Positions 50,501-64,000 of a stretch of 64,000 bases of DNA are shown one piece after another. Both the position numbers and the translations under genes were made by a program. Under the pieces are notes generated by a model, which saw nothing but the letters and a program-made list of their open reading frames with translations, searched no databases and was not told the origin of the DNA. This DNA comes from Podarcis tiliguerta. Lineage: Eukaryota. The stretch's first letter is position 1. Every line of letters begins with the position of its first letter. The DNA lies in assembly GCA_965153285.1 (NCBI GenBank), contig OZ229113.1. One strand, given 5' to 3'.

Positions 50501-53500
50501 GGGGGGGGTAGCCAAGCATTAGTAGAGCCACAGGTTCCCATCCCTGTCTTAGGTGCTTCCTTCCCACAAATTGTTGTAAATCCCTTATTTTTACCTGTTG
50601 TTTTAAGTTCCTTTGGCTGAACTACCAAACTATTTCATCTACACCAGATTATGGTTTGGCCTTAAGTTTGAAGACAGCCTTACTGCTTACAGCTCGTAAG
50701 AGCATCTATATGTAAATTAACTTGGAAGCTCAGTTTATACCAAACTTAAATGCCGTATCGTTTTATATATCTCTATGCAGCACAAATTAGGATAATTGTC
50801 CTTTTGGTACCCTTAATTTCTTGTATTTCCTTTGACAGAACCAACGCCGCCAGCAAAAAATGCAAGAAAAGGTAATCCCACTAACAGATATCTGTGCCAC
50901 TGAAAAAATGGAAGGTGATCATGATTGCAGCAGTGAAGCTGTAGGAAATGATTCTGAGGGTACCAGCCTAAAACAAGACGAGGAGTCATGTAACCCGTGT
51001 GAAGAGCAGTGCATGGATCAGACAGAGAGTATGAATGAGCAAGAGGGAACAACTGAAGTACAGAATGAAAATACAGGAAGTTCTGACCAAGAGGCAAACA
51101 ATGACGCCACAATGGCTGTTACCACAGAAGGCTTGGTTTCTGCTGTACAGTGTATTAATAAACGTGACAATCTGCCTGCCAAACATGATAGTCTTGATGA
51201 AGATGAGGATATTACCAATGGCTTTAACAAATTATCCTTGGATGAAGAGCCTAGCGACGATTCAGAAAGCTTGAATGATCTTCACGATTCTGAGACAAAA
51301 ATGTATGAAGTAGTAAATGAGGATCCAGAAACAGCATTTTGTACCCTTGCAAACAGAGAAGCTATGAACACAGAAGAAGGTTCAGTGCTTCATTGCTTGT
51401 ATCAGTTCACTCATAATGAGAAACTTTGTGAGAACAATAAACTGCTGTGTGATGTATGCACACAGAGGCAAGTTTGTGGACCAAAGACCTCTGGAAAAAG
51501 TATGCTCTTAAATATTTTCTTACCATGTCAGCCTAGCATATATGACTTCACAGGGAGGGAAGTTGGAAGTGCGTGTATAGCTGTTATAAAGGCATAGACA
51601 ACTGCATGTAGTAGTGTCCTAAGTAATCCTAGAGAATTGGAGATAGTCGTTTAGAGTGAGTATACAATTTGGCTGAAGTTGTATTTTTGAAAACTAATCA
51701 CATGGTGACAAAACTGAATGGGAGTAGCAGCTTTGGTATTTGTTTATTCAAAAACAGTTGTTTTCCAGATGTTTTGGACCACAGTTCCCAAGCTTCCAGC
51801 TTGGACTGATGGGAGCTGTAGTCAAAAACATCTTCAAGGTACAAAGTTGGTAAAGGCTGGTATACATTAATTTGTTTGTATTTTGAGTGTTACAAATTTA
51901 TAAAGGTCATTGTGAAAAGCTCTATTAAGCATCAGCTCAGAATCGGAGTAGCATAAATTGAGCTCTTTTCAGTCAAAGCAGTCAAAGTTTTAGCATGCCT
52001 GAAGTCTCAAATTATGTGATCCGTTATATTGCATTAGAACAATTCCATGACGGCATTCTTTAAAATCTAATAAATCATTTTTTTTCTTTTGTTCTGCAGA
52101 TGTCAAGAAACATGTATACACTAATGCCAAAAAACAAATGCTTATTTCTCTCGCTCCTCCAATTCTAACGCTTCATTTAAAAAGATTTCAACAGGTATAA
52201 ATGTTTCTGTAAAATAAGTTTTAAGTCCTTGCCTTCATCACTGTAAGCAGCATTGCTAACAGGAAAATGCTCGAGAGAGAAACTGGGAAAATTCTTATTG
52301 CCATATTACAAGTATATTTGAGCTATAAAAGAAATAATTTAAATTTATAAGAATTCTTGTCTTGAAGATCAGAAGCTTTGTTCTTAAATCACTAGATTGT
52401 GTCATTTTTATACATTTTATTTGCCACTGTCTCTGCTATCCTTCTAGACTGGATATAATCTCCAAAAAGTGAACAAGCACATAAAATTTCCTGAAGTAAT
52501 GGACTTGGCTCCTTTCTGCTCAGTTAAGTGTAAGGTAAGCAAAGAGAAAGTCTATTTAAATTTCCACCATTTTTCTCATGCAGAACAGCTTTAAAAAGTC
52601 AGCCACACAAGTTTAACTTGTGCACATAAAATCTTGTGTGTATCCAGTAAAAGAGATGCTTACTATGTGTATGTATTCAAAACCTGATAGCAGCCTGTGC
52701 TTTTCATATATCTGATCCTACCTTTCTACAGAACTTTCTCCCTCCTTCCAATCCCAAATATCCATTTGTTTCTTGAAGCATCCCAGTGGAAACAGCCATC
52801 ATTGTCTCAAACTCAGTACATCAAAGACCCAACCTCTTTCCTCTGAAACCCACCCCTCATAATTTCTGGCTTCTGCCTTCCCTTGAGTGCCCCAGTGTGG
52901 CCTCAAAGTAAGCAGCCTAATGTGATGAGGGTGACTGGTTTGGAATAACCGTATTTCTCTTCTGGCCATCATGCTGTCCTGGGAAATGCTGTCTCTTTTT
53001 TTCTAGATCTGACTCATTTAATTGTGAGCTCTATGAAAACAAGTTATTCTAGTTCCCCCATATACTAGATAGCCCATAGACACTGCTGTTGGGGTAAGAT
53101 GATCCCCTGGTATTCCCTAAGTCCTGGACCACTAGGCTTCTATCAGCACCTAAAATAAACACTTTGCCCTGTTCAAATACATGCTACTGAACATTCTTAA
53201 GGCTCACCCACACCACTTTCTGTTTTTGATAGCCATGTTGCTCACTGGGGAAAGATGGGTCTGAGCACAAAACATGTCATGGCCTAACTGTACTGGCTAC
53301 CAATTTGCTTCTGGGCCTAATTCAAATTGCTGGTTTTGACCTATGAAGTCTTAAGGAGCTCAGGGCTGTACTACATCAGACTGCCTCTCCCCCCATGAAC
53401 CAACCTGAGCCCTACGCTCTCACCTGAGGTTCTTTTCTCTGTGGGTGATAACACATGAATGGGCTTTTGCAGTGGTGCCCCCTTTGCCCAAGGAGGTATG

Positions 53501-54261
53501 CTTAGCATCATCACCCTTTTTTTAGATGCCAGGCAAAAATATAGGTTATTGACCAAGGCCTTTGATTGTAATTTTAGTGGGGTGGGATCTATTTAGATAT
53601 GATTTGTGTATTTGGGGCTGTTTTATCCTCTAATTTTTAGTCTCATTCTTAGCCAAATTGTTTTATTATTCACCTTTTTCTATATTTTTGTTTGAATTGC
53701 TCCTTTTATTAATAGATAAATGTTGCCCCTTATAGTGTTTCCTGTTTATTAGCTGAGCTTGGTTATAATGAAAAGATAATTGTATACTAGTGCGGAAGAA
53801 CGACCAAACGTTACGATTTTTGTGATGCATTATAAAATCAACCTTCTTGAAGTATTTTGGATTCCTTGTTTTCACAGAATGTTGTAGAGGGCAGCTCAAG
53901 AGTATTGTACTCTTTGTATGGTATTGTTGAACATAGTGGCACTATGAGATCTGGTCACTATACTGCCTATGTGAAGACGAGAGCTACTAACAACCAACTT
54001 TCTGATCTTGTCCTCCATGGCAAGATTGGACAAAGTAAGTTGCACCAGTGTTTTTACCCTAGATGACCAATGTAAAATTACTTTCTTGCCATATTACTGG
54101 AATTTAATGACACACACCTTTTGTTTTTCTGTTCAGCTTCAGAGACTGAATCATCCAAAGGACAATGGTTTCATATTAGTGATACACATGTGCAAGCAGT
54201 GCCTCTAGCCAAAGTGCTGAATTCACAAGCATATCTTCTATTCTATGAAAGACTACTGTAA
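41530..54261 (+). CDS. USP16: Ubiquitin carboxyl-terminal hydrolase 16, 17 coding exons, 827 aa
   Basis: ZnF-UBP domain (CKHLRKG...CQDC...WLCLKCGH|[15 protein letters not shown]), Cys box [16 protein letters not shown], His box [18 protein letters not shown]-terminus [11 protein letters not shown]. Exons: 41530-41590, 42685-42866, 43060-43163, 44137-44240, 44477-44664, 45097-45192, 45856-45986, 46690-46777, 47222-47300, 47923-48014, 48541-48594, 49598-49777, 50839-51499, 52100-52194, 52448-52534, 53878-54034, 54137-54261. Total 2484 nt, phases consistent. Confidence 0.96.
41652..41708. repeat. Perfect 27-bp tandem duplication
   Basis: AGTTTATACTCTTATTTCCTTGGCAGA x2. Confidence 0.9.
53270..53600 (+). 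mobile_element. Degenerate L2 LINE fragment
   Basis: CTGTACTGGCTACCAATT...TTCAAATTGCTGGTTTTGACCTATGAAG (L.WLPI...FKLLVLTY-like). Confidence 0.5.
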
Positions 54262-54449: not shown

Positions 54450-55382
54450 TGTTTTATCTAACATGAATTTAAATGACATTTTTACCTCTTTTACGAACAT
54501 TCTAGTGCTACATGGATGCAGAAGTAGGGCTCTTGTTCTCTTAAAAGTAGGCACAACTTTTTGCCGAGGGCCACATGTAACTAAGGCTATTAATACACAT
54601 GCACCCATTTACTTCCCAACAGCAACAGAGAACAGTGTTGGAAGCAGTGGAAGGAGGAATCGGGAGCAGTAGAAGTTAAAAGGTGCTCTTAATGTCCCTG
54701 TACTAGGTATAGGAACACATTTTTTGCCTACCTGTGCCTTAAAGGCTTAGACCGCAATACAGAGCTACAGATGTCTTCTAATGCAACTTGGGAATGTGCC
54801 AAATGAAGTTACCTATTCAGCTTGTTGAAACATGATGACTTATAGCCACTAGGAGAGAGGAACATAACTGGCCATGGATATGTTTTCTATGAAGGGTGGT
54901 GGCAGGATGTATATAGTATTTGTGGAGCCTAGAAGAGAAACCAATTTGCAGGAATTCCTTGTGGAAAAAAAATGGTTGGCTTAATTGGCAGTCTAGTCTC
55001 CCATTACCCCACATGTAAATAGATTTACCCCACGTAGGATTAGAACCTAAGTAGGAAAAAACTGGGCTTAGATAGATGAGAACAGCAAACAATCCACTGT
55101 GACATATTGCTAGGACAAGGTATTCTATCCAAGACTGTTCCATTGAAAGAAGGTGACTTCCTGCAGGAAGTCAATTCCAGAATCTTTCCTGGTTTTAATT
55201 GGATAGCAGGCCAATGGCAGAGGTGGTCATTTGTTGAGTGGACTGTAAACCTGTTATCGTGATGTCCATTAATTTCAGTGGGTCTGCTTTGAGTATGACT
55301 AACATTAGATACAGTCCTATCTTTCTGTAATATTGAATAGGATTTATTACCACATTCAGAACAATTTTTTACTGAAACAGTT

Positions 55383-55388
55383 TTTATT
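55383..55388 (-). terminator. Candidate CCT8 polyadenylation signal
   Basis: Minus-strand AATAAA about 95 nt after the TGA. A second copy lies at 55343-55348. Confidence 0.55.
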
Positions 55389-55481
55389 GAAATGGTACAA
55401 GACAAGCTAAGTCTCATAATTTAACGGTGAGTAACATATATGACAAGATACACAACTCCTTAAGTAGTACTCTGAAAGTGT

Positions 55482-55559
55482 TCAATCACTGTGGTCATCA
55501 TCCAATTCCTTCTTTCCTGTTGGTGGTTTGGGGCCACCAGCTGGTTTTGCCATGATGAT
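55482..55559 (-). CDS. CCT8: CCT8 canonical terminal coding exon IIMAKPAGGPKPPTGKKELDDDHSD*
   Basis: Acceptor ctaacaactacttttgcttgcag with a CTAAC branch point. Resembles the mammalian tail IIMAKPAGGPKPPSGKKDWDDDQND (from memory). Minus-strand AATAAA at 55383-55388. Confidence 0.92.
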   Translation of the reverse strand: MIMAKPAGGPKPPTGKKELDDDHSD

Positions 55560-58500
55560 CTGCAAGCAAAAGTAGTTGTTAGACCTACATTTTTACATAG
55601 AATGCACTTCAGCTGAATTAAGGTATGACAGTATTGATTTGATATGTATCTTTTGCATCATCTCTTACATACTTCCATAATTAGTATTACAGAAAGGTTA
55701 TGCAATGAAAAATGCATTCAACCCATAAGTCTTGACCATAGCTCCAGGACTGTTTTTGCTATTTTATAAAATATTGATTGAAATTGTAGAAATCAATCAG
55801 CCTAACAGGGAAAAGCAAAACCCTCTTGCACACGTGAGTAGCCCTTGGCTGCTCTTCTTGCATCTCAAAAAGCACCCATCTCCTTTGCAGGTGTCAGTTG
55901 TACAAGATTGCTATACCCACACTGCTAAGCAGCAATGGGGATAGCACTGTTGTCATGAGGAATTGTCTCCAAGAAGCAGTGATTGTCTGCTGTAAGTTTA
56001 GATTTCTATAGATACATGCTTAGCATGAATGCCAAAAATGGAAATCGCAGAATGCATTTCCTACAAAAGAGATACAAAACGTGGGGTGTTTTGGGTGCAT
56101 TGTGTGGTAACCAAGACAAAGTGTTAATGTTCTGTAAAAAAATTCAACTACAATAACTTGCAAAATATGTAAGATTAGCACACAAATAATGCTTCTAATA
56201 GTGTAAACTAAATCATGCATATTAGTCTATAGAATAATTCTTCAAACCATGTTTTAGGAATATTAACAGTGTTGTGCACCCTTATCTCAAGCAGGTTGTT
56301 AAATTGTGATGTAGCCTACGCATAAGTGGAAGTGGAAGCAAAAATACACTCAGCAGCACCAGGCAAAGGAATTCATACAAAGTCTCGTTCCTTGCCAACA
56401 TGAGCCATGATACCAAATCTTACTTCACACTACTGTTCAGGTCCATCTTTCCAGTCATCCTTGTCCCAATGTTCTGAAGCTTTAGGGGCTTTTGGACCAC
56501 CTGCTGCTTTTGCCATAATAATCTATAGGAATTTCACATCAAGCACAGAATTCCACCAAGTTTCAATTTTAAAAGTATTTATGTAAGAGTCTGCATAATC
56601 CTTTACTGTATGAAACTGATCATTTGAAAACAGAAGCCTACCAGAAGACTACACACTGCCACATTAAGTTATACACCTTCAACTTTAACCAAATCATATG
56701 AAGCATATATAACCCAACAATACTCTAGCAGCTTCCATACCGTATTGATTTAGCCTGATACCTGAAGCAATAAAAAAGCCTATTACACCAACTTACCTGA
56801 TCAACTCTTAGGACAGTTACTGCAGCATTTGTAGCCAGCTTAATCCCCCAGAACTTCCCAAGGTATGTGTCTAATACACCAGCTTCCAACATGTCTTTCA
56901 CAGCTGCAGTTTCAGCCTGTCAAATGTTAGAAAAAGAGTTCAGCGCCTCAACTTTCTGAGCAGATACAGGATTACAATGAGAGTTCCACTGATGTCAGTA
57001 AGAGTTAAAGGTGCTAAGAATCTGCCCATGGAACAAAATGGACAGCTAGCGGGTATTAATATTGATAATCAAGCCCATAGTATTTTGCTTTGAAAGAAAA
57101 CAGTATTTCCCTATTCAAAAACATCTGTAAGCCTTACATCACAAAACAGCTAGAATAGGAAGGTCGCTAAAATAACTGTAAAAGGATTAACAAAACAAGT
57201 GGAGTTTCCCCTGCTTAAGCCTCCCCAATTGGCCCATGAACCTACCCAGTCATCCACCTAATTTGTCAGGTGCAGGACAGGTAAAGCTACAGCACAGCCA
57301 AATTCAAACAGAAGAAACTGGAGTATGCTCTAACTGCATACACACTATGCCTTTAAAGAACATTTCCCTCCTCAAAAGATCCTGGGCACTATACAGTCCC
57401 AATAACTCTTAAACCACAAAATTATTCAAGGAGAAAATGTGTTTTGCCTGTGCTTTAAAAGTATAGTGAGTATGCAGCCTAAGTGTACTCCCAATTCTTC
57501 CTTTACAGATGTGCCCATCTGATCCAGAATCCCCACCCCACCCTGCAACCATAGTTAAAGACTACTGTTCCCTTGCAGACACTCTCCTAGGGATGGCCTT
57601 CCAGAACACTGCTGCCACCACAAGCATGTTACGCTGGGCATTAGCCTTACCTCAATATCAAACCCAACATTTTTGTTGCCTTCTTGATGTACGGCGTAGA
57701 GCTTAGAAATAAGTTCATTAGCCTTAACTCCAGAATTTTCAGCCAGGGCTCGGGGTATAGCTTCAAATGCCTCAGCAAATTTCTTGATAGCATACTGATC
57801 AAGACCTGGACAAGTCTAAAGACAGAATTGGATTTTAAGTCGCATTATATGGAAAGTTAAATTTAATAAAGATATTAAGTTTGTAGCTTACCTCTCCATA
57901 TGACGTGATCTGCTTAGCCAACTCTATCTCTGTTGCACCACCACCTGGAACAAGACGCTTATCCTGCAAAAGAGTTCAAGCAACTATTTCAAGTCTTTTT
58001 TAAAATTTATCTCACTCTCTTCCTTTATATTTATTTTATCAGTATACTGTCTCATATCCCCCTGTCCCAACTAAGACAGGGGGAGGAGACAACATACTGC
58101 ACCAAACAAACTAAAAAAAAAGAGTGTATTGTAACCCATTTTTATTTTAAGTAAGCAGTAAACAATTATTGTAAACTTCTTTTTTCTAGCAGTACATAAA
58201 TATTTTTTATGAATAAATAAGGCCCTGGTGAACAGAATGGTCTACCGGGCTCCAAAAGAACTACAAGCAGAGTGGCACTCTGCTCTACTGAGGGTAGTAT
58301 ATACTATTGTATATTCCAGTATGGTAGCATTTCTGCAACTGCACATGATTAACTTTGCATTTTAACAAGCCAGTAAAATAATGCTCTACATTCCTGCATT
58401 GCCGTGGGCTGGACTTATATGAACCTCGGGGTCCCTTCCAACTCTACAATTCTATGATTCTACATAGCACTTTACTCACCCGTGTGAGTACTTTGAAAGT

Positions 58501-59091
58501 GTTGACACCATCATCAATTGCTCTTTCTACATCATCCATAAGATTGTCTGTAGAGCCACGAATTACTATTGTAGAAATGGCACCATCTTCCTTTTCTGCA
58601 GGAAAATATATCAATGTTTTACTTGTGAAATCTGACTAAATGCAAAGTTTCTATATGCAATGTATTAAAGATAACGAGTAGACTAAAATAATAAACATAC
58701 CATGTTTAAACACAACTACTTGTGTTTCCCCAACTTCTGACAAACACACACTGTCACAGTAACCAATTTCTTCTAGATTAGGTGGTGTCTGGAAAGGAAA
58801 AAGGAGGATTATGTCTATGCAAAGGAGTAGGTTTTAAAAAAACCTCTGCTGTTCTCGCTACATACCAGTCTGGGGAGGGCTGTGGCACCAACAGTTTTAC
58901 ATAGTCTCCTGAGATCCCACTTAGAATTCAGCCTTTAAGAAAGGAGATAAAATAGTGTTCAGGTGTAATTTTCATAATCTAGAAATTCTTGTTAGTACCA
59001 AACTAATTTTTCCAGGAATGTTCCCTATCAACATTTTACTTCCTGCAAAGACCCTGTTCTAGGGCCTTTTAAAATAATAATAATAATAATA

Positions 59092-59122
<31 letters not shown>

Positions 59123-62100
59123 GATGAGCTCTCTATCTAGAAAATGGGAATTTGTCTTGTATAAACACTGAAAGCACCAGTCTCTCTTAAGCAATCCAGA
59201 ACACATTCTTTCCTAAGAATGTATGTAGTGCCTGCAGGATGAGACCAAAGTATACCAAGCCCAGCAGTCTGCAATATCCCAGCAGGTACTAGCAGTCTAC
59301 CAACAGACTGCAATTTACCATCTGCCTCTCACCACTGTCCTGTTTAGGAACAAGCAGGGACTCTGGTAATGGCTCAAGGACAGTGCCCCTCCATCATATC
59401 TTGATTGGTAACAGAAGCATTAAAGTGCATTTCATTATTGACAAAAGAAATTGACAAATAATCGTACATATGTACACCTTATCATCATCATCCAAACTAC
59501 CTGAAAACCAAAACCATATTAACTGCACACTGGACTTAAATGAAATCCTTTCCATGATCAGAAAAGTGACATCTCTAGAATTCTAAAGAAAATTTGCCAC
59601 AAATTGAAGAGGGGACAATTTAAGGGCAAAAATGGTACAAAATAAAATGATGAACTGTTCTGTGCCATGATCCTGACCTGCACGGAGTACTTTCCACCCA
59701 TTCACCCCCATCTTCAGAAAGAGAGGAAAACACACACACAGGGATAATCTTGGTTGAAGTCATAATGGGATGAAACATATGTACTAATTTACACTTCAGG
59801 AAACAAATATGTTATGTATTTCAGTTAAATGAGCCAAGAAATGTAAACAATTTACATCTTTGCACAACTTACCTGAGTAACATAATATTATATTTGTTAG
59901 CATAATGAAGTGCCATGTCTGCCACTTTTCCTCCTGTAACTACAACATTTACACCAGCATCAGCAATGCTCTTGACTTGTAACTCCAGTAAGTTTTCCTC
60001 TCCTCTGCTAAAATTTGTCAGCTCAGCGGCATTCTTGATGAGTACAGTTCCCTGCAATTATAAAGCATTTCCCCCATCATTCTCATCTTCAATTCCTAGT
60101 ATGTTTTAATACAAATAACCTGAAAAACAGGCAATTCCAGAAGTGACAGCTATCATAGAACCATGTTCTAAGTAATGCACATATAGATCAACAGCAACAT
60201 GTGTCTCCAGGATTTCTAAAGTGTTTAGCAAACAAAGACTGAGCTGCTGAAGAAGCTAGAAAAAGTGATTTGTGAATCATGGATATGGTGTTTTTGCACA
60301 AGGGTTTTTTGGGGAGCATTCCAAATGAACCATTGTCAGGTATGTTCATCTAAAGAACCTAACATGGAAGGACTTCAGACACTTAAGACCCTAGTACCAC
60401 CGAACAAAAGTTTACTGAATCATGGAAATATACGACAGACAATCCATGAAAGGACTGCCTGCTGAAATCCCAGCCCAGATAAAATCAGTCAAAAATTTGT
60501 AGTCATTTTACTAACTTACTTACACACACGCACCATTCTTGTGGCATAACTGGAAAATATGCAACAAGAGATCCCTCCATTTGCCCAAGCTTTCCATGGG
60601 TGTTGGGCACCCAGGGGCAAAAAGTCACTGCAAAGTTGTGACTGCTTCCCACTGACAGTTTTGTGGATCCCTGCCTTAACACAGAACAGATTGCATTTTT
60701 AAAAGGGCTGCAGCTATTTATCTAGTTGCAGCACCACTTTTTACAGTCACGATAATAGGACTGTCCCTCTCTGTGCTAACCAAGGTTTCGCCATATTGGC
60801 CCCTGTGAACAGAACTGCACAAAGGAAGGTAGCTCTCGGCCTGGTTCACCATGCAAATGCAGACACGGAAAGGATCGCCTTGAGAAAATAAGCAACTACT
60901 ATATATACGTAAAGACATGCAGCTGCTTCATACATATTTAATACTTCCAAAGGGTGGGAAACCATACCTTAGTTTCTGTTATCATACCATCAAAAGGGCA
61001 AGAATACACAGCTATTTTGGCATCTTTGACAGAAGTAACATCACCTTCAGTTTCTTTTTTAAAAACCATGCCATGCAATACTGTAGAAGCACAAATGCCA
61101 GAACCCTGAAAAGAACAGATTATAATTACCATTCCATCCAAGTTAAGCCAATGAAATCACACTGAGTTGGATCTAGACTGTCATACTTGGGAGTAGATTT
61201 CATTGATTTTAAGAGACCTACTGCAAAGTCTGAATACAACTAATTTTTTACTTTAATTAAATTAATGTGCTATTTAATGTGAAAGCATACCTGAACTCTG
61301 ATTGTATCTGCTTAGGAACAGTTAAATTGCTACAATTTAAAGCATTTGTTTTATCATTCTTATGTTTCTATTTCAATACAGCAAATGATTCCCTACTCTA
61401 GATCTTCCCAATCTTCCCCACTGATATTTGAAGAGAAATGCTAATTATCTAATTGAAGAGAAATTCATTATCTTATTGACTGAAAGCCAGAACTCTTTCT
61501 TTTCTGCGAAATCTACTTTCGAATTTCAGAATCGGAATGTTTATATGTATCCATACCTACATATGAAGTCTCTAATCTCCCAGGAAATAGGAACAGTCTA
61601 CTAAAAATCCACAGATGGTATGTTTTTTACACCCTCTCCTGTTTTTGGCCCCAACCAAAGTTCAGACAGAACTGCTTTTCTTCAAGGTTACCATAACTAA
61701 AGCTGCAACCCTCAAGCATAGTGACCAGAAGGCAAGTTCCAGTGAAACAAAGTGCCTTCAATGTTGAGTATTACAGTACTGAAAGGAAAAGAAAGAATGA
61801 CTTACTATGATCTTGCACACTCTGATGTTGTCAACATTAAAGTGACCCGACTCGGGGAAAATAGAGACTGTGAGAGAGCGAAAAATGAAAAGTAACATGT
61901 TTTTAGGAATGGCGCCAGTGACAATATTATGCTTTATAATATGAACAAGTGTTACTCTATTTTTAGACACTGTTGCAGCTTGACAAGAGCAGCTCAGGAA
62001 AATACAGGTACCTTGGTTTAAGAACAGCCCGGTTTACAAACTATTCAGTTTATGAACTACGCAAAACCCCAAGTAGTGTCCCGGTTTGCGAACTTTACCC

Positions 62101-64000
62101 CGGTCTAAGAACGGAAGCCAAATGGTAGAAGGGCACTGGTGGTGGGGGGCCTCCTTAGGGAAAGCGTACCTCAGTTTAAGAACAGTTTCGGTTTAAGAAT
62201 GGGCCTCCAGAACGGATTAAGTTCATAAACAGAGGCACCAATGTACTCAACTGAAAAACGACATCCAACAAGAAATTAAGACAAGTGACTTTCACTACAA
62301 AAAACAAGCTTGAAACGAACATGAAAATATTTTAGGTATCAAAAACAAAATACTATGTTTAGATTTTTAAAAATGACATATACTTACCACATGCCTCAGC
62401 AATAAGCTTAGTAAGAAATATTTCACTGCCACATTGTTTACTCATTATTGAAGTTTGCAGCAAAGATGCCACTTCTTCAACATCCCGAAGATTTTTTGCA
62501 GAGCAGCACACTAGATCAGGAAGTATCTCTAAGGCTTTCTTCATAGCTTTTTCATAGCCTTCAATTAGCTAAAATTAAAGACACTAGCATGTCTGTACTG
62601 TGATGCATAAGTTGTTAAAAGTTCAAAGTCAGTTTCATATCTTAACCTCACAAAGGATTGGATTCAGACTTCCCAAGAATAAAACTCTGCCAACTGGACT
62701 CTTCCATAAGCAGAAGCAGGGAAAGTGACCAGTTTTCCCTGAAGCCCCATTCCACACAAAAAGAGCCATTTTGACAGGGACATCTGGATCCAACCCAATC
62801 TCCACAAGGCAAAATAGGACACAATTAGGAATGGAAAAATTAAGAGGATAAACAAGAGACTGAGTTTCATACACAATTATTCAAAGATCCTAGAATACTA
62901 ATTTGAATTGCAATAATCTGAACAAAATAAAAGATTACCTCTGAAACAGAAAGTCCCATTCTTAGAAGCTCCTCTGCATGTTCTAGGAGGGCTCCAGCAA
63001 ACACAAGAACAAAATTTGTTCCATCACCAACTTCTTGCTCTTGCATGTGAGAAGCCAAGGCAATCATTTTTGCAGCTGGATGTTGAACCTGTTTAAGATT
63101 TTGTATCAGAGAACACTATTAAGCACACTTGTGTATATTCAGTAACTAATAGCATGCTTCAATATGTATTATGCTGCATTACAAAGTCAAAACATTTAAC
63201 TAATTCAGTGCACCTAAATCTTATTATGCGGCAACAGTCATTAAAACACATATGTGAAATAGCAAAACTTTGGCGTAATTAACAAGTTCTTCATACAATC
63301 TTAGCAGCACACATTTCTTATAATCATGCTAATTCAACACTGATATACACAAAGCTGCCTGTACCACAAATTTCTATCCATCCCATACACCCCACCCAAA
63401 GGTGTCTTTGGACCCCTTCACAGGGAAACAACACAGGCCTAGAAAAGCTTAGCTTGTAACAGATAGCATACACAATGTTTCGCCATAAATAATCCTCATG
63501 TACAAGTCAATATATCCTTAGCAGACTACAAATGAATAAGGCAGGAAGGAATTTACCTCCAACTCTCTTAGGATGGTAGCAGCATCATTAGTAACAAAAA
63601 GCTTCTCCAAATGATTGATAACCATTTTGTTCATCCCTTTAAAAAAAAAAAAAGAACACCTCAAGTATGTGAATGACAATTTAATATAACTAGACAGTGT
63701 TATGAAATGTGAATTAGTTTCAGGATTTAATTCTATCTAATTCTCCTGGCGTGCTCTGGTCCATGGGGTCACGAAGAGTCGGACACGACTAAACGACTAA
63801 ACAACAACAACAAATTCTCCAAACAAATCATGGCATTGTTCCTGGGTTTATCAACAAACAAAAGCATCATAAGCTGTATTTCTTAATACATACTACATAG
63901 TCACCCTAAATTCCTCTTTTTAAGGTTATAATTTATGAATATTTTAAAAAGTCTTACCATTTGGTCCATAGGCTGTGCGAGTTGTTTGAGCAAGCTCTTT
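55482..64000 (-). CDS. CCT8: T-complex protein 1 subunit theta (TRiC/CCT chaperonin), 5'-partial
   Basis: Exons 5'->3': 63958-64000 (partial, KELAQTTRTAYGPN), 63557-63636, 62939-63088 (QEQEVGDGTNFV), 62388-62568, 61806-61867, 60968-61105, 59873-60051, 58866-58932, 58701-58788, 58480-58595, 57892-57963 (RLVPGGGATEIE), 57651-57815, 56797-56916, 55482-55559. The GDGTN variant of the ATP-binding motif is characteristic of theta. Confidence 0.96.
56424..56522 (-). CDS. CCT8: Duplicated alternative CCT8 C-terminal cassette exon IIMAKAAGGPKAPKASEHWDKDDWKDGPEQ* (coding 56430-56522)
   Basis: Phase-0 acceptor ttcctatag|ATT, paralogous to the last exon, TAG at 56430-56432, then TGTGAA|GTAAGA donor. Confidence 0.8.
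59073..59121. repeat. (AAT)n microsatellite
   Basis: Near-perfect AAT run. Confidence 0.9.
62004..62243. mobile_element. Degenerate Tigger-like MITE in CCT8 intron 5
   Basis: GGTACCTTGGTTTAAGAAC ... GTTCATAAACAGAGGCACCAATG|TA. Resembles copies A and B. Confidence 0.6.
63747..63812 (+). mobile_element. RTE/Bov-B LINE 3' end, heavily 5'-truncated
   Basis: GTCCATGGGGTCACGAAGAGTCGGACACGACTAAACGACTAAAC(AAC)n with TSD AATTCTCC at 63739-63746 and 63813-63820. Confidence 0.8.

What the first reader, a model, noticed from the sequence alone, without database searches (positions are those of the whole stretch)
56424..56522. CCT8 carries a duplicated, diverged last exon: a switchable C-terminal tail for the TRiC/CCT chaperonin
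Seen: 274 nt after the exon-14 donor is a phase-0 acceptor opening IIMAKAAGGPKAPKASEHWDKDDWKDGPEQ* (30 aa). It is a clear paralog of the canonical last exon IIMAKPAGGPKPPTGKKELDDDHSD* (25 aa, 55482-55559). Over the first 11 codons the two copies differ at 6 nt, and 5 of these are synonymous third-position changes. That pattern fits purifying selection on both copies rather than decay. It is too short for the ORF track. Known: the C-terminal tails of chaperonin subunits are flexible, face the chamber interior and influence substrate handling. Inference: alternative splicing produces two CCT-theta isoforms, one with a longer tail containing two Trp residues, giving specialised TRiC complexes without duplicating the gene. 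I cannot tell whether this isoform is already annotated in some non-mammalian vertebrates.
Basis: partly seen in the sequence, partly recalled or inferred. Interest (0 to 1): 0.9.

Follow-up and report, generated by a model that had tools for sequence, protein, structure and literature searches.

The report
Known alternative tail exon of CCT8
This lizard's CCT8 chaperonin gene really carries a second, strongly conserved copy of its last coding exon that gives the protein a different tail, but public annotation already lists this isoform in the same genus and across bony vertebrates; only its function is unstudied.

Summary
CCT8 lies on the minus strand. 274 nt after exon 14 there is an AG acceptor, a 30-codon frame paralogous to the canonical last exon, a TAG, and a GT donor 6 nt later.

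The exon is real. Against a bird contig (L001) only exon 14, this exon and the canonical last exon align; the introns do not. A teleost contig (L005) has it too, with 22 of 31 differences at third codon positions.

It is not new. NCBI lists it as "T-complex protein 1 subunit theta isoform X1". The Podarcis raffonei entry (XP_053242536.1) has a tail identical to the window's, beside an X2 entry with the canonical tail. Similar entries exist for birds, alligator, turtle, lizards, frogs, a caecilian, coelacanth, many teleosts and seals. The Xenopus tropicalis reference protein (NP_001007875.1) carries this tail.

The core motif GHWDKD.W is 92-100% conserved in 39 distinct tails, more than the canonical tail's Trp (64%). 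I found no paper on the isoform.

Inclusion level, tissue pattern and the cassette layout in this species are therefore inferred. Whether the two tails give specialised TRiC complexes is untested.

The parts
56797..56916 (-). CCT8 exon 14 (40 codons, phase 0-0), the constitutive exon spliced to either tail exon
   Evidence: matches CCT8 residues 484-523 in PDB chains (E 2e-17); tblastn of Podarcis raffonei X1 (P0215) covers it.
56523..56796 (-). 274-nt intron between exon 14 and the alternative exon. Its 3' splice site is tatAG with a weak pyrimidine tract (11 of 20).
   Evidence: It does not align to the bird locus except for its last 25 nt.
56424..56522 (-). Alternative tail exon, 99 nt: 30 codons (56522..56433), TAG (56432..56430) and 6 nt of 3'UTR before the donor
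   Evidence: 100% identical over 30 aa to residues 524-553 of XP_053242536.1 (P0215); 85% nt identity to L001:10162-10296.
56414..56423 (-). 5' splice site gtaaga, plus the end of the conserved block
   Evidence: In the bird locus a gtaagc donor sits at the same offset, 6 nt after the stop.
55560..56413 (-). Intron between the alternative exon and the canonical last exon. It holds no AATAAA or ATTAAA, and one TGCATG at 56219.
   Evidence: It does not align to the bird locus.
55482..55559 (-). Canonical last coding exon (25 codons plus TGA), with a stronger 3' splice site (ttttgcttgcAG)
   Evidence: tail identical to Podarcis raffonei and P. muralis isoform X2 (P0255, P0253).
55343..55481 (-). 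Shared 3'UTR with two AATAAA signals (55388..55383 and 55348..55343)
   Evidence: Read directly.

Best explanation
This is a genuine, ancient, alternatively used coding exon of CCT8. It arose by tandem duplication of the last coding exon no later than the common ancestor of bony vertebrates.

When the 99-nt exon is spliced in after exon 14, its own TAG ends the protein. The usual 25-residue tail is replaced by a 30-residue tail whose core GHWDKD.W is nearly invariant, giving a 553-aa protein instead of 548 aa.

In amniotes the exon most likely acts as a cassette. A conserved GT donor lies 6 nt after the stop, so the canonical last exon would follow as 3'UTR and the shared poly(A) site would be used. 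With the stop so close to the last junction, the 50-55 nt rule predicts that the mRNA escapes nonsense-mediated decay.

The weak pyrimidine tract fits a regulated, non-default exon.

Shown here: exon anatomy, paralogy, conservation at the protein level, and annotation as isoform X1 in the window's genus and many other vertebrates.

Inferred: cassette use of the donor, escape from decay, regulated inclusion, and any effect on the tail-lined inter-ring space of TRiC.
For: - Anatomy.
- Lizard against bird: only exon 14 (87%), the alternative exon with its splice sites (85% over 136 nt) and the canonical exon (79%) align. The introns do not.
- Codon pattern: window against teleost shows 31 differences in 30 codons, 22 at third positions, with dS saturated and dN 0.21. 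Bird against teleost is 21 of 26 at third positions, dN 0.13.
- A profile of three alternative exons found 30 proteins, including a spliced Hucho hucho CCT8 fragment that joins exon 14 directly to this tail (P0035, UniRef A0A4W5LV34).
- About 40 of the 120 listed full-length CCT8 clusters carry the tail (38 met a strict motif test and a few variants missed it).
- X1 and X2 pairs are annotated on the same contig in several species. P. raffonei X1 is identical to the window's exon. The Xenopus tropicalis NP_001007875.1/AAH80140.1 protein carries the tail.
- The stop falls at codon 30-31 in nearly all tetrapod entries: alligator 29, amphibians 31. Coelacanth has 34 codons and teleosts about 35.
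- G17, H18, W19, D20, K21, D22 and W24 are 92-100% conserved in 39 distinct tails.
- Neither the window nor the bird locus has a poly(A) hexamer between the two tail exons. The donor is conserved and the acceptor tract is weak.
Against:
- NCBI X-numbered isoforms are model predictions, and I could not see their mRNA exon structure. Cassette versus separate terminal exon is therefore unproven.
- The teleost contig shows no donor right after its stop and no canonical exon within the next 1.1 kb, so the layout may differ in fish.
- All four spliced metatranscriptome or cDNA-like contigs recovered (L003, L004, L006, L007) use the canonical-type tail. This fits the alternative form being the minor one in many samples.
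Confidence: 0.88

Rival explanations
1. The exon is used as an alternative terminal exon with its own cleavage site in the downstream intron, not as a cassette followed by the canonical exon.
For: The teleost contig L005 has no GT donor just after its stop and no canonical exon in the next 1.1 kb. Exons carrying a stop are often terminal.
Against: The window and the bird locus have no AATAAA or ATTAAA between the two tail exons, where about 2 are expected by chance. A GTAAG donor is conserved at the same offset in lizard and bird. Read-through ORF fragments from other sauropsids show V then S/R at the codons where GTAAG would lie.
Confidence: 0.12
2. The exon is conserved mainly as a regulatory, non-productive exon, or is included so rarely that it contributes little protein. 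On this view the X1 entries reflect pipeline predictions more than an abundant protein.
For: The 3' splice site is weak. Every spliced environmental contig recovered has the canonical tail. Most X1 entries are automatic models.
Against: Substitutions fall overwhelmingly at third codon positions over a very deep (fish to tetrapod) divergence, and the stop position is kept. This points to selection on the peptide, not just on RNA. The stop lies 6 nt from the junction, which predicts no decay. The curated Xenopus tropicalis NP_ entry (also listed as AAH80140.1) and an Ensembl-derived salmonid entry carry the tail.
Confidence: 0.07
3. The exon is a decaying, unused duplicate (pseudo-exon) that resembles the last exon only through recent duplication.
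For: None beyond its absence from simple ORF lists.
Against: Orthologues with an intact frame, stop and splice sites occur in bird, teleost and many annotated vertebrates, while the surrounding introns are unalignable.
Confidence: 0.02

Closest known systems
NCBI RefSeq 'T-complex protein 1 subunit theta isoform X1' of Podarcis raffonei (XP_053242536.1, 553 aa), with isoform X2 (XP_053242538.1, 548 aa)
   Same: Residues 524-553 of X1 are identical to the window's 30 codons. The X2 tail is identical to the window's canonical exon. Of the lacertid proteins compared, the P. raffonei entries fit the window's other exons best.
   Different: Nothing detectable. The window is this gene or that of a very close relative. 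I could not see the XM record, so its exon structure and RNA support are unknown to me.
Xenopus tropicalis CCT8 reference protein NP_001007875.1 / AAH80140.1 / UniProt Q68ER1 (554 aa)
   Same: It carries the same type of tail (core GHWDKDDW). A second X. tropicalis entry (UniRef A0A6I8SZD3) has the canonical tail.
   Different: The tail is 31 residues and differs at several positions. Here the alternative form is the named reference protein, not a minor X-numbered model. From my own knowledge, AAH accessions come from full-length cDNA clones, which would make this clone-level evidence.
Single C-terminal tails of invertebrate deuterostome CCT8 (Oikopleura dioica E4YBR3, crinoids, sea stars)
   Same: They share the start of the tail and a K-Q-x-G-(H/N)-W-D acidic core. 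The alternative exon matches this core better than the vertebrate canonical tail does.
   Different: These genes show one tail only. They lack the second Trp and the KDEPE-type extension.
[quoted passage not shown]
   Same: The exon replaces exactly the flexible segment after residue 523. That segment belongs to the tail mass reported to contact unfolded tubulin in the open state.
   Different: Those studies used the canonical tail of human TRiC. Neither mentions an alternative CCT8 tail.

Membership tests
CCT8 / TCP-1 theta gene | Exons encode the theta subunit of the group II chaperonin | tested here: met
   Exon 14 matches CCT8 residues 484-523 in PDB chains (E 2e-17). tblastn of lacertid CCT8 proteins covers residues 37 to the end across 64000..55485.
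CCT8 isoform X1 (alternative C-terminal tail) as annotated by NCBI | A 30-residue tail with core GHWDKDDW, encoded between exon 14 and the canonical last exon | tested here: met
   100% identity over 30 aa to P0215 residues 524-553. Position confirmed.
CCT8 isoform X1 (alternative C-terminal tail) as annotated by NCBI | Splice junction from exon 14 to the alternative exon present in RNA of this species | not testable with these tools
Spliced evidence comes only from other species (P0035 Hucho hucho, P0194 Xenopus tropicalis).
Stop-containing cassette exon predicted to escape nonsense-mediated decay | Stop codon less than about 50-55 nt upstream of the last exon-exon junction | tested here: met
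   The TAG ends at 56430 and the donor follows 56424, so 6 nt separate them. The bird locus has the same spacing.
Stop-containing cassette exon predicted to escape nonsense-mediated decay | The donor is actually used, with the canonical exon following as 3'UTR | tested here: inconclusive
   A conserved GTAAG donor and no poly(A) hexamer in the downstream intron favour this. No transcript was seen.
Tandem exon duplication with mutually exclusive coding use | Two adjacent homologous exons in the same phase, of which only one contributes coding sequence to a given protein | tested here: met
   Both exons are phase 0 and share their first 5 residues and GGPK. The upstream copy carries its own stop, so only one copy is translated.
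Tandem exon duplication with mutually exclusive coding use | Only one of the two exons is present in each mRNA (strict mutually exclusive splicing) | tested here: inconclusive
   The layout suggests that both exons sit in the X1 mRNA. This is not verifiable without transcripts.

The most novel reading that the evidence does not exclude
The alternative tail is not a minor annotation curiosity. It would be an unstudied TRiC variant that has existed since at least the ancestor of bony vertebrates. Its core (GHWDKD.W) is more constrained than the canonical tail. It keeps the ancestral metazoan tail pattern, while the 'canonical' vertebrate tail is the derived copy. It is included under regulation, so that cells can change the chemistry of the tail-lined inter-ring chamber for particular substrates. 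Most mammals may have reduced or lost its use, which would explain why work on human, bovine and yeast TRiC has not met it.
Probability: 0.4. Interest if true: 0.55.

Novelty: already known. Interest (0 to 1): 0.27.

Why it matters
TRiC/CCT folds actin, tubulin and many WD40 proteins. Its disordered subunit tails are now thought to hold the unfolded substrate in the open state. A second CCT8 tail that is conserved from teleosts to seals and adds an extra Trp offers a natural way to ask what one tail contributes.

The databases already hold the isoform, so the finding adds no new gene structure. Its value is a pointer: a deeply conserved, apparently unstudied isoform of a heavily studied machine. 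It is easy to test in Xenopus, zebrafish or chicken.

Tried and rejected
I could not fetch the Logan contigs behind the genomic ORF fragments P0003, P0005 and others.
I redid it with alignment A1.
- A scan of genome contigs with the alternative-exon alignment found nothing.
- The search for homologous proteins with the Oikopleura protein tail region returned only Oikopleura-like proteins.
- Many genomic ORF fragments show Q where the window and bird have TAG, both at the acceptor and at the stop. I considered that the stop is lost in relatives and rejected it. Sister fragments show W or Q just after the normal teleost end (P0032, P0034, P0023). The gene caller therefore evidently used codes that read TGA or TAG as sense. 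The RefSeq proteins of birds and lizards end at the same codon.
- RBFOX/QKI motifs: the window has one TGCATG (56219) in the last intron and the bird has four at other positions. I drew no conclusion about tissue specificity.
- Literature searches found no paper on this isoform. The one CCT8 mention in PMC8769537 concerns a different, truncating human exon.
All searches used single exons by reference, or proteins returned by the tools.
- I took no contig for human. The mammal-like protein fragments P0001, P0002, P0011, P0015, P0016, P0042 and P0047 were not followed.

Full report
**Observation.** On the minus strand the window holds the 3' part of CCT8, from residue 37 to the end, over 64000..55485.
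- Exon 14 is 56916..56797: 40 codons, phase 0. It matches CCT8 residues 484-523 of solved TRiC structures (E 2e-17).
- After a 274-nt intron ending in tatAG comes a 99-nt segment, 56522..56424. It has 30 codons, a TAG at 56432..56430, six further bases and then GAA|gtaaga.
- The canonical last coding exon is 55559..55485 plus TGA. Two AATAAA signals follow, at 55388..55383 and 55348..55343.
- The 30-codon peptide hits only CCT8 chains in PDB, at residues 524-546.

I therefore tested conservation.

A search with exon 14 returned short genomic ORF fragments from other vertebrates. An alignment of these (A1) was used to scan metagenome contigs. This gave two long contigs from a bird (L001, L002) and one from a teleost (L005). 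Identity was judged from tblastn against named RefSeq proteins.
- The bird locus has an exon at L001:10188-10286. It has the same 30 codons, a TAG at the same codon and a gtaagc donor six bases later. Its canonical exon lies 650 nt further on.
- blastn between the lizard and bird regions aligns three islands and nothing else. These are exon 14 (87%), the alternative exon with 25 nt upstream and 10 nt downstream (85% over 136 nt), and the canonical exon (79%).
- The teleost contig has the exon 930 nt after exon 14, with 37 codons.
- Between lizard and teleost, 22 of 31 differences in the shared 30 codons are at third positions. Between bird and teleost the figure is 21 of 26. dS is saturated and dN is 0.13-0.21.

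This is selection on the encoded peptide, not decay.

**Is it known?** Yes.
- A profile of the three exons (A2) searched against 1.84 billion cluster representatives gave 30 hits.
  - Most are genomic ORF fragments from fishes and sauropsids.
  - One is a spliced, multi-exon CCT8 fragment of Hucho hucho (UniRef A0A4W5LV34) in which exon 14 runs straight into this tail.
- I then searched with the C-terminal region of a sea-star-like CCT8 open frame from contig L004. This listed 120 full-length CCT8 clusters with their source names.
- About 40 of these carry the alternative tail. 38 met a strict motif test and a few variants missed it.
- They include P0215, [quoted passage not shown] (XP_053242536.1, 553 aa). 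Its last 30 residues are identical to the window's exon.
- The X2 entry of the same species (XP_053242538.1, 548 aa) has the window's canonical tail, as does P. muralis X2.
- Among the lacertids compared, P. raffonei fits the window's other exons best. The window is therefore from Podarcis or a very close relative.

The same tail is annotated in the following groups:
- birds: Manacus, Vidua, Zonotrichia, Coturnix, Excalfactoria, Numenius/Gavia/Falco, Pavo
- alligator and Chelonia
- lizards: Euleptes, Pogona, Sceloporus, Varanus
- frogs: dendrobatids with X1/X2 pairs, Leptodactylus, Pristimantis
- a caecilian and the coelacanth
- many teleosts
- seals: Mirounga, Leptonychotes

The Xenopus tropicalis reference protein NP_001007875.1 (also AAH80140.1, UniProt Q68ER1) has this tail, and another X. 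tropicalis entry has the canonical one. From my own knowledge, AAH accessions come from full-length cDNA clones. If so, the transcript has been in the databases for about two decades.

Cartilaginous fishes in the list show only the canonical tail, but absence there was not tested.

**Evolution.**
- The stop falls at codon 30 in most amniotes, 29 in alligator, 31 in amphibians, 34 in coelacanth and about 35 in teleosts.
- Across 39 distinct alternative tails, G17, H18, W19, D20, K21, D22 and W24 are 92-100% conserved. In 36 distinct canonical tails the single Trp is kept in only 64%, and lacertids have Leu there.
- Invertebrate deuterostome CCT8 proteins have a single tail: Oikopleura, crinoids, sea stars, a hemichordate. 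Its K-Q-x-G-(H/N)-W-D pattern looks more like the alternative exon than the canonical one.
- I infer a tandem duplication of the last coding exon no later than the ancestor of bony vertebrates. The upstream copy probably stayed closer to the ancestral sequence. This last point is a soft inference from short peptides.

**How it most likely works.** Including the exon replaces the 25-residue tail with a 30-residue tail, because the exon brings its own stop.
- Lizard and bird share a GTAAG donor six bases after the stop. Neither has an AATAAA or ATTAAA between the two tail exons, where about two are expected by chance. I therefore favour a cassette layout, in which the canonical exon follows as 3'UTR and the shared poly(A) signals are used.
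- A stop this close to the last junction is predicted to escape nonsense-mediated decay (the 50-55 nt rule, established knowledge).
- The acceptor has a weak pyrimidine tract: 11 of 20 pyrimidines, against 13 (lizard) and 17 (bird) for the canonical exon.
- The four spliced environmental contigs recovered all use the canonical-type tail.
- Both points fit a regulated exon that is often the minor form.
- The teleost contig lacks a donor right after its stop, so fish may use it as a terminal exon.
- None of these splicing steps could be verified with reads.

**Functional context.** The segment after residue 523 is part of the disordered tails that fill the inter-ring space of TRiC. In reconstitution and cryo-EM work these tails contact unfolded tubulin in the open state (bioRxiv 10.1101/2022.03.25.483853; PMC9113939). 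A tail with a second Trp and a different charge pattern could change that environment. This remains a hypothesis. Five literature searches found nothing on this isoform. The one splicing paper that mentions CCT8 describes a different, truncating human exon.

- NCBI X-numbered isoforms are pipeline models, and I could not see their mRNA structure or RNA support.
- Many Logan-derived ORF fragments show Q or W where a stop is expected. I read this as gene calling under alternative genetic codes, not loss of the stop.
Exons were searched one by one, by reference.
- I took no contig for human, and mammal-like fragments were left aside.

**Verdict.** The two-isoform reading is supported by annotation and conservation. 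Specialisation of TRiC is untested. The feature is already known to the databases, in this genus among others. Interest is low to moderate, and rests only on the apparent lack of any functional study.

Noticed in passing
window 50860-54261 (+): The 3' part of a USP16-like deubiquitinase gene lies tail to tail with CCT8. It includes a 245-aa open exon at 50860..51597 and a last exon ending ...LLFYERLL at 54121..54261. An earlier scan note places MAP3K7CL just beyond the window's end. From memory, this is the same gene order as on human chromosome 21.
   Followed up: no
L004:489-2099 (JACSEG010001306.1): A sea-star-like CCT8 (95% identical in the tail region to Asterias rubens) sits as one uninterrupted 537-codon open frame in a 4.9-kb metagenome contig. 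Either that lineage has almost no introns in this gene, or the contig is a processed copy or cDNA.
   Followed up: partly
proteins P0018, P0023, P0026, P0028-P0032, P0034: Logan-derived ORF calls on vertebrate genomic contigs read through TAG (as Q) and TGA (as W). The gene caller apparently chose alternative genetic codes for these eukaryotic fragments. Such entries can mimic loss of a stop codon.
   Followed up: partly
L001:9743-10936: The bird's last CCT8 intron region holds four TGCATG (RBFOX-type) motifs where 0.3 are expected. One lies about 15 nt upstream of the alternative exon's acceptor and one about 40 nt after its donor. The lizard window has a single one, at 56219. Positions are not conserved between the two.
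   Followed up: partly
P0270 (Latimeria chalumnae isoform X1, 564 aa): The coelacanth has three annotated tails. One leaves the alternative exon after ...GHWDKD and continues into unrelated sequence, which suggests an internal alternative donor or a model error.
   Followed up: no
P0146, P0220 (Mirounga, Leptonychotes); P0042, P0047: Seals have an annotated X1 with an intact 30-residue alternative tail (N replaces H before the first Trp). Some mammal-like genomic fragments look degenerate. The state of the exon across mammals was not examined, and possibly human material was left aside.
   Followed up: no
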